DNA of 63,999 nt, filler included, from Octopus bimaculoides (Eukaryota): assembly GCF_001194135.2 (NCBI RefSeq). It is 10 parts of 9 records of this genome, joined end to end, with 100 filler letters (N's around TTAATTAATTAA, not from the genome) between each part and the next. Parts side by side here need not be neighbours in the genome. Positions count along the whole stretch, not along the records: positions 10,386 to 14,916 come from NW_026368592.1; 9 more parts are not named here. One strand, given 5' to 3'. The position numbers and the translations under genes were made by a program. This document shows, piece after piece, positions 10,342 to 14,916 of this stretch. Below the pieces are notes generated by a model. The model was given only the letters and a program-made list of their open reading frames with translations. It had not been told where the DNA came from and made no database searches. Positions within the stretch are counted from its first letter, which is position 1. Every line of letters starts with the position of its first letter.

Positions 10342-10529
10342 NNNNNNNNNNNNNNNNNNNNNNNNNNNNNNNNNNNNNNNNNNNNATATATATATATACA
10401 CATATATATATATATGTGTTTATATATATATATATGTATATATACATATATATTTATTTATTTATGGGTTTCAGCCTAGTGGCTGTTGTCATGTTGGAAC
10501 ACCACCGTGACTTTCCGTCTTTATGCTGT

Positions 10530-13500
10530 GTTCTCTTCACGTACGTTCGTTCGGTCGATCATTCGTTCGTTCGTACGTACGGACGTAAGTACATGCGTTC
10601 GTTCGTTCGTACATACGTACGTACGTATGTTCGTTCGTTATTTCGTACGTTCGTTCATTCATTCGTTTGTTCGATCGTTCATACGTACTTACGTTAGTTC
10701 GTTCGTTCGTTCGTTCATTCGTACGTACGTACGTTCGTTCATACGTACGTACGTTCGTACGTACTTTCGTTCGTTTGGACGTACGTACGTACGTTCGTTC
10801 ATTCATTCGTTCGTTTGTACGTACGTTCGTTCCGTCGATCGTACGTACGTATGTACGTACGTTTGTTCGTTCGTACGTACGTTCGTTCGATATTTCGTGC
10901 CCACGTAATACGTACGTACGTACATTCGTTCGTACGAATGAACGAACGTACGTACGTAGGTACGACCGAACGATCAAACGAACGAACGAATTACGTAGGC
11001 ACGAAATATCAAACAAACTTATGTAAGAACGAACGAACGAACGAACAAACGTACGTACGTACGTACAAACGAACGAACGAGCTAACGAGCGAGCGAATGA
11101 ACGTACGTACGTACAAACGAGAGAACGAACGAACTAATGAACGGAGAAGCGAATGAACGTACGTACGTACATCCAAAATAATGAACGAACGAACGAAACA
11201 AAGAACGAATGAACGAACGTACGTACGTATTACCTAGGCACGAAATATCGAACAAATGTACGAACGAACGAACAAAAGTACATACGTACGTACAAACAAA
11301 CGAACGAAAGAACTAACGAGTGAATGAACGAACGTACGGACGTACAAACGAACGAACAAATGAATGAACGTACGTACGTCCAAACGAACGAACAAACGTA
11401 CGTACGTACGAAGGGACGAACGAACGGACGTACGAAGGGACGTACGTACGTATGTACGAACGAACAAACTAAGGAACGAACGTACCTACGTAACTACGAA
11501 CGTACGTACGTACGAACGAACGTAGGTATGAACAAACGAAGGAACGAACGAACTAATGAACGAAGAAACGAATGAACGTACGTACTAACATCCAAAAGAA
11601 CGACCGAGCGTACGTACGAACGAACGAACTAACGAACGTACGTACGTACGTATGAACGAACGAAACAAAGAACCAACGAAGGTACATACGTATTACGTAG
11701 GCACGAAATATCGAACAAACGTACGAATGAACGTACGAACGTACAAACTAATGGACGAACGAACAAACGTACAAACGAACGAATGATAGAATTAACGAGC
11801 GAATGAACGAACGTACGTACGTACAAACGAATGAACGTACGTACATCCAAACGAACGAACGAACGAACGGACGTACGTACGAAGGGACGAACGGACGTAC
11901 GTACGAAGGGACGAACGGACGTACGTACGAAGGGACGAACGAACGTACATACGTAATTACGAAAGAACGAACGGACGTACGTACGAACGAACTAACGAAC
12001 GAAACAAAGAACGAATGAACGAACGTACGCACGTATCACCTAGACACGAAATATCGAACAAATCTACGAACGAACGAACGAACAAAAGTACATACGTACA
12101 AACAAACGAACGAAAGAACTAACGAGCGAATGAACGAACGTACGGACGTACAAACGAACAAACAAATGAATGAACGTACGTACGTCTAAATGAACGAACA
12201 AACGTACGTACGTACGAACGAACGAACGTACGTACGTACGATCGAACGAAGGTATGAACAAACGAACGAACGAAACAACGAACGTACGTACGTACGTATT
12301 ACGTAGGCACGAAATATCGAACAAACGTACGAACGAACGAACGTACGAACGAACGAAGGAAACAAAGAACGAATGAACAAACGTACGTACGTATTAACTA
12401 GGCACGAAATATCGAACGAACGAACGAACGTACGAATTAACTAGGCACGAAATATCGAACGAACGAACTAACGAACGTACGTACGTACGTATGTACGAAC
12501 GAACGTACGAATGAACGAACGAACGAACGAAACAAAGAACGAACAAACGTACATACGTACGTACAAACAAACGAAAGAATTAACGAACGAATGAACGAAC
12601 GTCCGTACGTACAAACGAATGAAAGTACGTACGTCCAAACGAACGAACGTACGAAGAGACGAACGAACGTACGTACGTATGTACAAAAGAACAAACTAAC
12701 GAACGAACGTACATACGTAATTACGAACGTACGTATGTACGAACGAACGAACGTACGGACGTACGTATGTACGAACGAACGTACGTACGAACGAACGAAG
12801 GAAACAAAGAACGAATGAACAAACGTACGTACGTATTAACTAGGCACGAAATATCGAACGAACGAACGAACGTACGAACGAACGAATAAATGGACGAACG
12901 AACAAAAGTACATACGTACGTACAAACAAACGAACGAATGAACTAACGAGCGAATGAACGAACGTACGGACGAACAAATGAATGAACGTACGTACGTCCA
13001 AACGAACGAACGAACGTACGTACGTACGAAGGGACGAACGAACGGACGAACTTACGCATTACGAAGAAACAAACTAACGAACGAACGTACCTACGTAACT
13101 ACGAACGAACGAACTAACGAACGAACGTACGTTGGTACGTATGTACGAAAGAACGAACGTATGCACGAAAGAACGAACGAACGTACGAAATAACGAACGA
13201 ACGTACGTAAGTACGTAGGAACGAATGTTCGTTCCTACGTACGTAGTTCGTTCGTTATTTCGTACCTACGTTCCTTCGTTCCTTCGTACGTACGTTCATT
13301 CGTTCCTTCCTTCGTTCTTTCATACGTACGTACGTTGCTTCGTTATTTCGTACGTACGTACGTTGTTTCGTTCCTTCGAACGTACGTACGTTCGTTCGCT
13401 CTTTCCTTCGTTCGTAATTACGTATCTACATCCGTTCTTTCGTTCGTACGAACGTACGTACGTTCGTTTGGACGTACGTACGTTCATTCATTTGTTCTTT

Positions 13501-14916
13501 CATTTGTTCGTTCTTTCGTTTGTACGTACGTATATACGTTTGTTCCTTAGTTCATTCGTTCGTTCATTCGTTCTTTCTTTCGTTCGTTCGTACTTACGTA
13601 TATACGTACGTTCATTCCTTCGTTTGTTCGTTAATTCTTTCGTTCTTTCGTTCATTCGATCGTACGTACGTATATACGTACGTAAGTTCGTTCGTTTGTA
13701 CGTAAGTTCGTTCGTTCGTACGCACGTTCGTTCTTTCATTCTTACGTCCGTACGTACGTACCTTCGTTGTTTCGATCGTTCGTTTCTTCGTTAGTTCTTT
13801 CGTTCGTTCGTTCGTTCGTACTTGCGTACGTTCCATCGTACGTGCGAAAGAATTGATGAACGAGCGAACGATCGAGGGAACGTACGGAAATTCGTTCGTT
13901 CGTTTGTACGTACTTACGTTTTTCGATAGTTCGTTCCTACTTACGGAGAAATGAACGAATGAACGAACGTACGTATGTAGGTACGACCGAACGATCAAAT
14001 GAACGAACGTACGTAAGTACGTAGGAACGAACGTTCGTTCTTTCGTACTTACATATGTACGTACATAAGTTCGTTCGTTCTTTCTTTCGTTCATTCGTTT
14101 GTTTGTTAGTTAATTCTTTTGTTCGTTCGTTCATTCGATCGTACTTACGTATGTACGTACGTAATTTCGTTCGTTCTTTCGTTCTTACTTACGTTCGTTC
14201 GTCCGTTCGTTCGTACGTACATTCGTTCTTTCGATCGTTCGTTTCTTAGTTCGTTCGTTCGTTCGTGCGTACGTACTTACGTACGTTCCATGGTACGTAC
14301 CTGCGCTCGAAGGAACGAAGTACGTACGTAGGTACGACCGAACGAACGAATGAACGAACGAACAAACGTACGTACGTACGTAGAAACGAACGACGGAAAG
14401 AACTAATGGGCGAGCGAACGAAAGAAAGTACGTACGTACGTACAAACGAAAGTACTAACGAACGAACGAACTAATGAACAAACAAACGAATGAACGAACA
14501 TAGGTACGTACGTACGAAGGGACGAACGAAGGAACGTACGTACGTACGAACGAACGTACTTAAGTATGAACGAACGAACGAAAGAAAGAACGTGCATACC
14601 TAATTACGAACGAACGTATGAAATAACGAACGAACGTACGAAATAACGAACGAGCGTACGTAAGTACGTAGGAACGAACGTTCGTACTTACGTATGTACG
14701 TACGTAAGTTCGTTCGTTCGTACGTACGTTCGTTCGTTCGTAATTATGTATGTACGTACCTTCATTCGTTCGTTCGTTTCTTCGTTAATTCTCTCGTTCG
14801 TTCGTTCGATCGTACTTACGTACGTAGGTACGACCGAACGATGAAACGAACGTACGTACGTATTACGTAGGCACGAAATATCGAACAAACGTACGTAAGA
14901 AGGAACGAACGAACAA
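10530..14916. repeat. CpG-rich complex satellite of CGTA/CGAA/TTCG tetramers with internal strand switches and a recurring 19-bp box
   Basis: About 4.4 kb of (CGTA)n interleaved with (CGAA)n or (TTCG)n; TAGGCACGAAATATCGAAC (or 1-2 nt variant) found 9 times forward and once reversed. Confidence 0.97.

What the first reader, a model, noticed from the sequence alone, without database searches (positions are those of the whole stretch)
10885..14890. Satellite switches strand repeatedly at re-used junction motifs (higher-order foldback units)
Seen: polarity alternates T-rich (10530-10925), A-rich (to ~13224), T-rich, A-rich and so on. Three A-to-T switches use GTAAGTACGTAGGAACGAA(C/T)GTTCG (13207, 14013, 14660). 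GTAGGTACGACCGAACGA follows the T-to-A switches at 10956, 13977, 14328 and 14824. At 13183-13265 the arms form an extended hairpin (GTACGTAGGAACGAA-TG-TTCGTTCCTACGTAC). Inference: an inversion arose once and was then amplified as a palindromic higher-order repeat, as expected from foldback, rolling-circle or template-switch amplification. It could extrude cruciforms or yield dsRNA.
Basis: partly seen in the sequence, partly recalled or inferred. Interest (0 to 1): 0.8.

Follow-up and report, generated by a model that had tools for sequence, protein, structure and literature searches.

The report
Tetranucleotide satellite with repeated strand flips
This is a non-coding, decayed four-base satellite array, most likely eukaryotic, that reverses orientation nine times at a few junction sequences that were themselves copied; such flipping satellites are already known, for example in flour beetles and at human centromeres.

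Summary
From 10537 to the piece's end the DNA is a degenerate (GWAC)n satellite. GAAC and GTAC units mark one orientation; GTTC and GTAC mark the other. Both reported motifs occur exactly where stated, only on the + strand and only near flips. Each is the satellite consensus plus two private substitutions, and unit shuffles never give more than one copy. The copies therefore descend from duplication.

The three A-to-T junctions are one palindromic junction present three times. Two copies match at 93% over 75 nt across the junction. The T-to-A junctions are related too, but differ by indels on the T side, and the motif lies 2-31 nt inside the A side.

Five of nine flips are locally palindromic. 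All flips keep the 4-nt register at the switch itself. Long-arm mirror symmetry rises above the 70-77% satellite background only around 13226.

The best reading is strand switching at self-complementary sequence, then duplication of the dyad cassettes. Mechanism, organism and read support could not be tested. The closest precedent is Tribolium satellite dyads with conserved inversion sites. I rate it a new member of a known kind, of moderate interest.

The parts
10537..10933 (-). T block 0: satellite in reverse orientation, starting 10 nt before an M1-like core (CGACCGAACGA on the - strand at 10547). It holds landmark L on the - strand at 10885-10908 and landmark K on the - strand at 10771-10788.
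10909..10958 (.). T-to-A junction alpha: local palindrome centred at 10933.5 on a GTAC unit, 22/25 pairs.
   Evidence: 10885-11014 folds at -40.8 kcal/mol, z -7.6
10956..10973 (+). Motif M1 (GTAGGTACGACCGAACGA), copy 1.
10934..13226 (+). Large A block: degenerate (GAAC/GTAC)n with a higher-order period of about 806 nt. Landmark L (GGCACGAAATATC) lies at 10998, 11237, 11700, 12043, 12306, 12401, 12444 and 12843.
   Evidence: 11183-11435 matches 11989-12241 at 92%; 12327-12436 matches 12769-12878 at 99%
13207..13225 (+). Motif M2 (GTAAGTACGTAGGAACGAA), copy 1.
13183..13265 (.). A-to-T junction delta-1: palindrome centred at 13226.5 (GGAACGAA-TG-TTCGTTCC). Mirror matches reach about 370 nt on each side.
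   Evidence: 12972-13030 matches 13497-13439 at 93%; 12855-13012 matches 13590-13433 at 80%
13227..13838 (-). T block 1. Its 3' part is homologous to T blocks 2 and 3.
13839..13888 (+). Short A segment between junction beta (13838.5) and junction epsilon (13888.5). It has neither M1 nor M2.
13889..13945 (-). Short T segment with a degenerate inverted L-like motif (GATAGTTCGTTCC at 13925). It ends at junction alpha' (13945.5).
13946..14032 (+). Mini A block: M1 at 13977-13994, 18 nt, then M2 at 14013-14031. 13955-14009 is 96% identical to 10934-10988.
14013..14052 (.). A-to-T junction delta-2: palindrome centred at 14032.5, 18/20 pairs.
14033..14300 (-). T block 2. It ends at junction beta (14300.5), and its T side is shared with 13838.5.
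14301..14679 (+). A block 2: M1 at 14328-14345 and M2 at 14660-14678.
14625..14734 (.). A-to-T junction delta-3: palindrome centred at 14679.5, 45/55 pairs. 14620-14694 is 93.3% identical to 13167-13241.
14680..14821 (-). T block 3. It ends in an M1-like arm on the - strand (14802-14819).
14802..14841 (.). T-to-A junction gamma: palindrome centred at 14821.5, 18/20 pairs. It equals junction beta minus 43 nt flanked by TACGTACGT.
14822..14916 (+). A block 3, cut by the piece's edge: M1 at 14824-14841 and L at 14863-14886. 14817-14914 is 88.8% identical to 10949-11042.

Best explanation
This is a genuine, non-coding, decayed satellite array, most likely eukaryotic, built from the 4-nt unit G-W-A-C (GAAC and GTAC).

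The reverse complement of GWAC keeps the same G..C frame, and GTAC is its own complement. The two strands therefore share register and short stretches of identical sequence everywhere in the array. I infer that replication or repair occasionally switched strands at such self-complementary points, by foldback priming, hairpin capping or template switching. That would create spacer-less palindromic tail-to-tail junctions (GGAACGAA|CG|TTCGTTCC) and head-to-head junctions within GTAC runs.

What is shown is that the junction-bearing segments were then duplicated as cassettes. The route could be unequal exchange, segmental duplication or a circular inverted-dimer intermediate. The cassettes later diverged by substitutions and small indels. 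The result is about three irregular dyad units (T block plus A block) at 13227-14916, next to a 2.3-kb one-way array.

The junctions can fold into hairpins or cruciforms. Whether they do so, or have any function, is unknown.
For: - Tandem 4-nt structure: 1076 units, 54% exact GAAC or GTAC. Identity is 70% at lag 4; see also the TRF result.
- Polarity blocks are very clean.
- The register is kept at all 9 switches. In 32-nt flanks it is kept at 8 of 9, against 91% at internal control points and 25% expected for random joins.
- Five switches are local palindromes scoring 12-18, where random juxtapositions of T and A pieces reach that score with frequency 0.007-0.034.
- Hairpin energies are far below shuffles at the junctions (z -10.9, -7.6, -4.4, -3.7, -2.2) but not inside the arrays (z about -0.4).
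- Copies arise by descent. M1 is present 4 times and M2 3 times, against at most 1 in 2000 unit shuffles.
- Junction-spanning and cassette matches: 75 nt at 93.3% spanning two delta junctions, 55 nt at 96.4%, 98 nt at 88.8%, and T blocks at 80-93%.
- Gamma equals beta minus 43 nt between 9-nt direct repeats.
- No Pfam family in the longest open frames and no Rfam family.
- Precedent and mechanism literature: PMC13081366 and PMC12581902 describe conserved inversion sites in Tribolium satellites. PMC4689423 describes hairpin-capped intermediates giving inverted dimers.
Against: - There is no read-level or second-assembly support, and no related DNA was found anywhere.
- Long-arm mirror identity of 74-77% equals the background between any two satellite stretches, except around 13226.
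- Four of nine switches are not palindromic.
- T blocks carry the variant GTAAGTAC 8 times and almost no landmark L. The interior of the large A block shows the reverse pattern. The arms are therefore not simple recent mirror copies.
- Unit lengths differ widely, so a regular rolling-circle product is not seen.
- The A-side arm of the delta junction is much better conserved than the T-side arm, which is unexplained.
Confidence: 0.6

Rival explanations
1. Assembly or sequencing artefact. Under this reading, chimeric or foldback reads, or mis-joins through self-complementary GTAC runs, created orientation switches that do not exist in the genome.
For: - Satellites are prone to misassembly.
- Every GTAC run is identical on both strands, which can confuse graph-based assemblers.
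- No reads or independent assemblies could be consulted.
Against: - Artefactual foldbacks give near-perfect arms. Here the arms are 74-93% identical and carry indels.
- The same junction occurs three or four times with diverged flanks, which points to an evolutionary history.
- The A-to-T junction centre is GAAC|GTTC, not a GTAC run.
Confidence: 0.1
2. Recurrent independent switching at hot-spot motifs. Under this reading, M1 and M2 are sequences where strand switches happen again and again, and no junction was ever amplified.
For: - The A-side arm of delta is identical in all copies while the T-side arms differ.
- T-to-A switch points lie at different distances from M1: 2, 22, 27 and 31 nt.
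Against: - Homology extends across the junction on both sides: 75 nt at 93% for 13226 against 14679.
- About 50 nt of T side is shared by 14033 and 14680.
- The T blocks are co-linear cassettes ending at one homologous point.
- The gamma/beta difference is a simple 43-nt deletion.
- The exact motifs with their private substitutions are absent from the 2.3-kb array interior, so there is no pool of unswitched hot spots in this piece.
Confidence: 0.12
3. A Foldback-type transposable element, or nested copies of one, whose long inverted terminal repeats are made of short tandem subrepeats.
For: - The piece holds inverted arrays of short degenerate tandem repeats.
- The left edge of the array at 10537 is sharp, with an M1-like core 10 nt inside it.
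Against: - There are nine orientation switches, not one central loop.
- No matching right terminus or target-site duplication lies within the piece.
- There is no transposase-like frame; Pfam returned nothing.
- The blocks are repeated as tandem cassettes.
Confidence: 0.05
4. The dyads are kept by selection as a structural or RNA-producing element, such as centromeric non-B DNA or a hairpin-RNA/siRNA source. This can coexist with the best explanation.
For: - The junction cores are better conserved (93-100%) than the arrays around them at 70-80%.
- Predicted hairpins are strong.
- Similar conservation is discussed as possibly functional in Tribolium (PMC13081366).
Against: - Conservation can simply reflect recent duplication.
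- There is no evidence of transcription, chromosomal location or copy number.
- Four junctions have no hairpin potential.
Confidence: 0.08

Closest known systems
Macro-dyad symmetries with conserved inversion sites in Tribolium satellite DNAs (TmSat1/TmSat2, TfSat01/TfSat03): PMC13081366 and PMC12581902
   Same: - Arrays are made of sub-arrays in opposite orientation.
- A small number of inversion-site sequences recur and are better conserved than the monomers.
- Cassettes have fixed key points and a variable number of repeats between them.
- Hairpins are predicted at the inversion sites.
   Different: - Tribolium monomers are about 110-360 bp or more, and sub-arrays run from several kb to tens of kb. 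Two intermingled satellites are joined by transition zones, and thousands of junction copies are confirmed on raw HiFi reads.
- Here the unit is 4 nt and the sub-arrays are 0.05-2.3 kb.
- No second satellite is seen, there is a single 4.4-kb sample, and the organism is unknown.
Satellites whose repeat unit itself contains inverted subunits (Tribolium brevicornis 1061 bp, T. madens MAD2 704 bp, T. audax TAUD2), as summarised in PMC12581902
   Same: An inversion arose once and was then amplified as part of a longer repeat unit.
   Different: Those units are regular and homogeneous. Here the dyad units are irregular (806 nt, 647 nt, more than 237 nt) and have been remodelled by indels.
Inverted duplications or triplications from foldback priming, hairpin-capped ends or ODIRA (PMC4689423, PMC10622511, PMC3907307)
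   Same: - Junctions lie at short self-complementary sequence and are palindromic at the centre.
- Head-to-head and tail-to-tail arrangements alternate.
- Palindrome centres are prone to later rearrangement.
   Different: Those are recent events in unique DNA with near-identical arms. Here the arms are old and diverged, they lie in low-complexity sequence, and no intermediate can be shown.
Strand switches within human centromeric and pericentromeric satellite arrays in complete assemblies (e.g. bioRxiv 10.64898/2026.07.22.740206, listed; otherwise my own knowledge)
   Same: The orientation of tandem repeats changes within a single array.
   Different: Those involve large blocks and are usually read as inversions. 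Re-used junction cassettes at sub-kb spacing are not the typical description.
Foldback (FB) transposons (my own knowledge)
   Same: They have inverted arrays of short degenerate tandem subrepeats.
   Different: They are single elements with two termini and target-site duplications. They are not a series of nine switches in tandem cassettes.

Membership tests
Satellite / tandem-repeat array with higher-order structure | Head-to-tail repetition of a short unit | tested here: met
   Identity at lag 4 is 70%. TRF reports period-4 arrays. There are 1076 GWAC-type units.
Satellite / tandem-repeat array with higher-order structure | Longer-period repeats above the basic unit | tested here: met
   An 806-nt offset gives 92% over 253 nt, and a 442-nt offset gives 99% over 110 nt. 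There are 118 non-consensus 18-mers with at least 3 copies, against 0.02 in shuffles.
Satellite / tandem-repeat array with higher-order structure | High genomic copy number and heterochromatic location | not testable with these tools
   The source organism is unknown and no related DNA was found in any searchable collection.
Satellite dyad symmetry with conserved inversion sites (Tribolium type) | Sub-arrays of opposite orientation within one array | tested here: met
   Ten blocks and nine switches.
Satellite dyad symmetry with conserved inversion sites (Tribolium type) | Few inversion-site types, each conserved between copies | tested here: met
   Delta occurs 3 times, identical over 34 nt, with 93% over 75 nt for one pair. 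The M1 block occurs 4 times, with 26 of 27 nt invariant.
Satellite dyad symmetry with conserved inversion sites (Tribolium type) | Multi-kb sub-arrays and two intermingled satellites with transition zones | tested here: not met
   Sub-arrays are 50-2293 nt and only one satellite type is present, although in two variants.
Satellite dyad symmetry with conserved inversion sites (Tribolium type) | Junctions recur genome-wide and are present in raw reads | not testable with these tools
   No reads or genome are available.
Foldback-inversion / ODIRA-type product | Junction centred on short self-complementary sequence | tested here: met
   Five of nine junctions score 12-18, against a null frequency of 0.007-0.034.
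Foldback-inversion / ODIRA-type product | The inverted arm is a copy of the adjacent arm over its whole length | tested here: inconclusive
   Matches rise above background only around 13226, out to about 370 nt each side at 80-93%. Elsewhere identity is 74-77%, equal to background. Variant content also differs between arms.
Foldback (FB) transposon | One pair of terminal inverted arrays with defined ends and a target-site duplication | tested here: not met
   There are nine switches in tandem cassettes, and only the left edge of the array lies in the piece.
Foldback (FB) transposon | Transposase-related coding sequence (present in some copies) | tested here: not met
   The longest frames are period-4 peptides with no Pfam match.
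Assembly hairpin or chimera | Near-perfect arm identity and a unique junction | tested here: not met
   The arms are diverged and carry indels, and the junctions are present in 3-4 diverged copies.
Assembly hairpin or chimera | Junction absent from raw reads | not testable with these tools
   No reads are available.

The most novel reading that the evidence does not exclude
Dyad cassettes with conserved inversion points, so far reported only in Tribolium, would be a general way for satellites to grow. A satellite whose unit frame is strand-symmetric (GWAC) would repeatedly shed hairpin-capped or inverted-dimer extrachromosomal intermediates. These would reintegrate and lay down alternating head-to-head and tail-to-tail units. 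The junction loops might also be maintained for a chromatin or small-RNA role.
Probability: 0.15. Interest if true: 0.6.

Novelty: new member of a known kind. Interest (0 to 1): 0.38.

Why it matters
If the junctions are real, this shows at base-pair resolution how a simple-sequence satellite can change strand without breaking its repeat frame. It also shows that the resulting dyads are then propagated as units. That would extend a pattern described in flour-beetle centromeric satellites to a very different repeat type and a much smaller scale. It would also provide a compact test case for models of palindrome formation and instability, since the junctions are short enough to clone.

On its own it is one 4.4-kb sample from an unknown genome, without read support. 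Its present value is therefore descriptive.

Tried and rejected
- **External DNA searches.** A 14-mer of landmark L in metagenome contigs gave only single chance hits, and none of those loci holds satellite-like sequence. M1 in prokaryotic genomes gave 6 chance hits. Three viral scans found nothing.
- **Literature search by sequence.** No paper contains the 16-mers of the satellite. Surveys of AACG microsatellites did not identify a taxon.
- **Protein route to the source genome.** A search with the frame spanning junction alpha returned only generic (NERT)n peptides, which are spurious frames over (AACG)n microsatellites, at 36-61% identity. Exact look-ups of two window frames found nothing. 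Two fetched contigs (L127, L128) hold only small compound microsatellites.
- **Genes and RNAs.** There is no Rfam family and no Pfam family. The stop-free frames of up to 189 aa follow from the period-4 composition.
- **Long palindromic arms.** With relaxed scoring every junction shows arms of 66-77% identity (about 75% at the four best). The same holds for any two satellite stretches, so I do not count this as evidence.
- **First palindrome null.** My first null took the maximum over 85 offsets and was too generous. I replaced it with single random juxtapositions.
- **Pure CpG-deamination decay.** Variants do concentrate at the C and G of the unit, but transversions are about as common as transitions, so this reading is not supported.
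Full report
**What is there.** The piece (10386-14916) opens with an (AT)n-rich microsatellite (10386-10465) and about 70 nt of unique sequence. From 10537 to the edge it is one degenerate tandem array. Parsed in register, it consists of 1076 four-base units. Of these, 32% are GAAC and 22% are GTAC. Most of the remaining units differ from these by one base, mainly at the C or G that form the CpG between units. The CpG observed/expected ratio is 3.4. Identity is 70% at lag 4, and no single longer period dominates. Strict self-comparison nevertheless shows higher-order structure. An 806-nt offset gives 92% over 253 nt, and a 442-nt offset gives 99% over 110 nt. Recurring landmarks confirm this: L = GGCACGAAATATC, K = GTACGTACGTCCAAACGA, and L' = CGAAATAACGAAC. 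Any two stretches of the array align at 70-77%, so that range is the background for every comparison below.

**Nature of the sequence.** No Rfam family matches. The longest stop-free frames (up to 189 aa) are period-4 peptides with no Pfam match. They follow from the base composition. I take the array to be non-coding satellite DNA, most likely eukaryotic. That last point is my inference from sequence type only.

**Check of the observation.** Orientation can be read from the 4-mers of (GAAC)n against those of (GTTC)n. A two-state segmentation gives blocks with almost no contrary 4-mers, for example 770 against 1 in the large A block. The AT-skew profile agrees. After refinement the blocks are:
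- T 10537-10933
- A 10934-13226
- T 13227-13838
- A 13839-13888
- T 13889-13945
- A 13946-14032
- T 14033-14300
- A 14301-14679
- T 14680-14821
- A 14822 to the edge

M2 (GTAAGTACGTAGGAACGAA) is exact at 13207, 14013 and 14660 and ends three of the four A-to-T switches. M1 (GTAGGTACGACCGAACGA) is exact at 10956, 13977, 14328 and 14824. It begins 22, 31, 27 and 2 nt after four of the five T-to-A switches. Each motif is the satellite consensus with two private substitutions. In 2000 shuffles of units within blocks, neither motif ever had more than one copy. Among 265 repeated 18-mers, the 18 that occur only near switches are exactly these two families. The hairpin at 13183-13265 is real: -38.8 kcal/mol, z = -10.9.

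**Junction families.** I label the A-to-T junctions delta and epsilon, and the T-to-A junctions alpha, alpha', beta and gamma.
- Delta (13226.5, 14032.5, 14679.5). All three copies share an identical 34-nt A-side arm and a centre of GAACGAA-YG-TTCG. The ancestral form GGAACGAACGTTCGTTCC is a perfect palindrome with no spacer, and the copy at 13226 differs by one C-to-T change. Copies 1 and 3 match at 93.3% over 75 ungapped nt spanning the switch. Copies 2 and 3 share about 50 nt of T side apart from an 8-nt indel.
- Beta (13838.5 and 14300.5). The two copies share the T-side sequence GTACTT(G/A)CGTACGTTCCAT(C/G)GTACGT.
- Gamma (14821.5). It is beta with 43 nt removed between two copies of TACGTACGT.
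- Alpha (10933.5) and alpha' (13945.5). They share 55 nt of A side at 96.4% and have an inverted L or L-like motif on the T side.
- All M1-bearing A sides share GTACGTA(C/T)GTAGGTACGACCGAACGA.
- Epsilon (13888.5) stands alone.

The three T blocks on the right are co-linear, at 80-93% in the segments matched by strict BLAST. Region 13227-14916 is therefore about three copies of a dyad cassette: delta, T block, T-to-A junction, M1, A block, M2. The lengths are 806 nt, 647 nt and more than 237 nt. The first copy also holds a small inverted insert at 13889-13945.

**Symmetry tests.** With strict scoring anchored at the switch, five junctions are local palindromes:
- 10933.5: 22/25 pairs
- 13226.5: 65/80 pairs
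- 14032.5: 18/20 pairs
- 14679.5: 45/55 pairs
- 14821.5: 18/20 pairs

Random juxtapositions of a T piece and an A piece reach those scores with frequency 0.007-0.034. My first null, which took the maximum over 85 offsets, was too generous and I discarded it. The other four junctions are not palindromic.

All nine switches continue the 4-nt register at the switch itself. In 32-nt flanks, eight of nine keep it, and the ninth has a 1-nt deletion 20 nt downstream. Internal control points keep it 91% of the time, and random joins would do so 25% of the time. The junction types are not independent events, but five or six types all in register is still unlikely by chance, roughly 0.001.

Long-range mirror symmetry exceeds background only around 13226. 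There, 12972-13030 matches 13497-13439 at 93% and 12855-13012 matches 13590-13433 at 80%, both on the dyad diagonal. The arms are also not the same variant. In the satellite's own orientation, GTAAGTAC occurs 8 times in T blocks, whereas in A blocks it occurs only in the three M2 copies. Landmark L occurs nine times in A blocks, once in T block 0, and never exactly in T blocks 1-3.

**Mechanism.** Three things are shown: the frame of the repeat is strand-symmetric, most junctions sit on self-complementary sequence without a spacer, and the junction-bearing cassettes were duplicated. I infer that a nascent or broken end within the array folded back or switched template at such a site, giving a palindromic junction. 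The spacer-less delta centre is what replication of a hairpin-capped end would leave. The alternation of tail-to-tail (delta) and head-to-head (M1) junctions is what an inverted-dimer intermediate would lay down, as proposed in the ODIRA model (PMC4689423). Foldback priming at breaks is documented in PMC10622511 and PMC3907307. The cassettes would then have spread by unequal exchange, or through such a circle, and decayed by slippage-type indels such as the 43-nt deletion. I cannot distinguish these routes. The irregular unit lengths argue against a recent, regular rolling-circle product.

**Comparison with what is known.** The closest precedent is Tribolium. Its major and minor satellites form sub-arrays of opposite orientation with a handful of inversion-site types conserved at 95-99.9%. 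They form cassettes with fixed key points and variable repeat number, confirmed on raw HiFi reads (PMC13081366; PMC12581902). The authors of the first paper state that such macro-dyads have been documented only in that genus. The present case differs in several ways. The unit is 4 nt rather than over 100 bp. Sub-arrays are sub-kb to 2.3 kb rather than several kb to tens of kb. There is no second satellite. The repeat frame itself is strand-symmetric. Strand switches in human centromeric satellites are a looser parallel.

**Caveats.** No related DNA, reads or organism could be found. An assembly artefact therefore cannot be excluded, though diverged arms and multiple diverged junction copies argue against it. 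The better conservation of the A-side arm of delta than of its T-side arm is unexplained. Cruciform extrusion, dsRNA production and any function remain conjecture.

**Verdict.** This is a new member of a known kind of satellite organisation. It is of moderate interest and would be worth following up only once the source genome and its reads are in hand.

Noticed in passing
window 10386-10536: An (AT)n-rich microsatellite with AC/GT interruptions (10386-10465) is followed by about 70 nt of unique sequence. This is the only non-satellite flank in the piece, and it is too short to identify the locus.
   Followed up: no
window 10537-10560: The array starts abruptly at GTACGTTCGTTCGGTCGATC. The core of junction motif M1 (CGACCGAACGA) lies here on the - strand, 10 nt from the array edge. 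It is the only copy that is not next to an orientation switch.
   Followed up: partly
window 12327-12436 and 12769-12878: A 110-nt direct duplication at 99% identity lies inside an array whose background identity is 70-77%. This suggests very recent unequal exchange or conversion.
   Followed up: no
window 11873-11944 and 12394-12460: There are local secondary tandem repeats. A 24-nt unit (GTACGTACGAAGGGACGAACGGAC) occurs three times. A 43-nt unit carrying landmark L occurs at 12394 and 12437.
   Followed up: no
window 10537-14916: Variant units differ from GAAC or GTAC mostly at the C and G that form the inter-unit CpG: about 340 of 415 single changes. Transversions are about as frequent as transitions, so simple methyl-CpG deamination does not explain the decay.
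   Followed up: partly
window 13445-13460: A single GAAC unit sits inside T block 1 (GTTC GTAC GAAC GTAC GTAC GTTC). It is either a one-unit orientation flip or a double substitution.
   Followed up: no
T blocks versus A blocks, window 10537-14916: The two orientations carry different sequence variants. GTAAGTAC, read in the satellite's own orientation, occurs 8 times in T blocks, whereas in A blocks it occurs only in the three M2 copies. Landmark L is almost confined to A blocks.
   Followed up: partly
L127 (ENA k141_707523) 270-360; L128 3480-3610: Unrelated public contigs hold small compound (GTTC)(GTAC)n(GAAC)n microsatellites. L127 switches orientation through a GTAC run and shares 23 identical nt with window 13196-13218. 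L128 contains CGAAATAACGAACGAACG, which matches L'. These are probably low-complexity coincidences.
   Followed up: partly
public protein collection (P0003-P0010): Predicted proteins with long (NERT)n or (NEQT)n runs are spurious frames read over (AACG)n microsatellites in eukaryote-like contigs.
   Followed up: no
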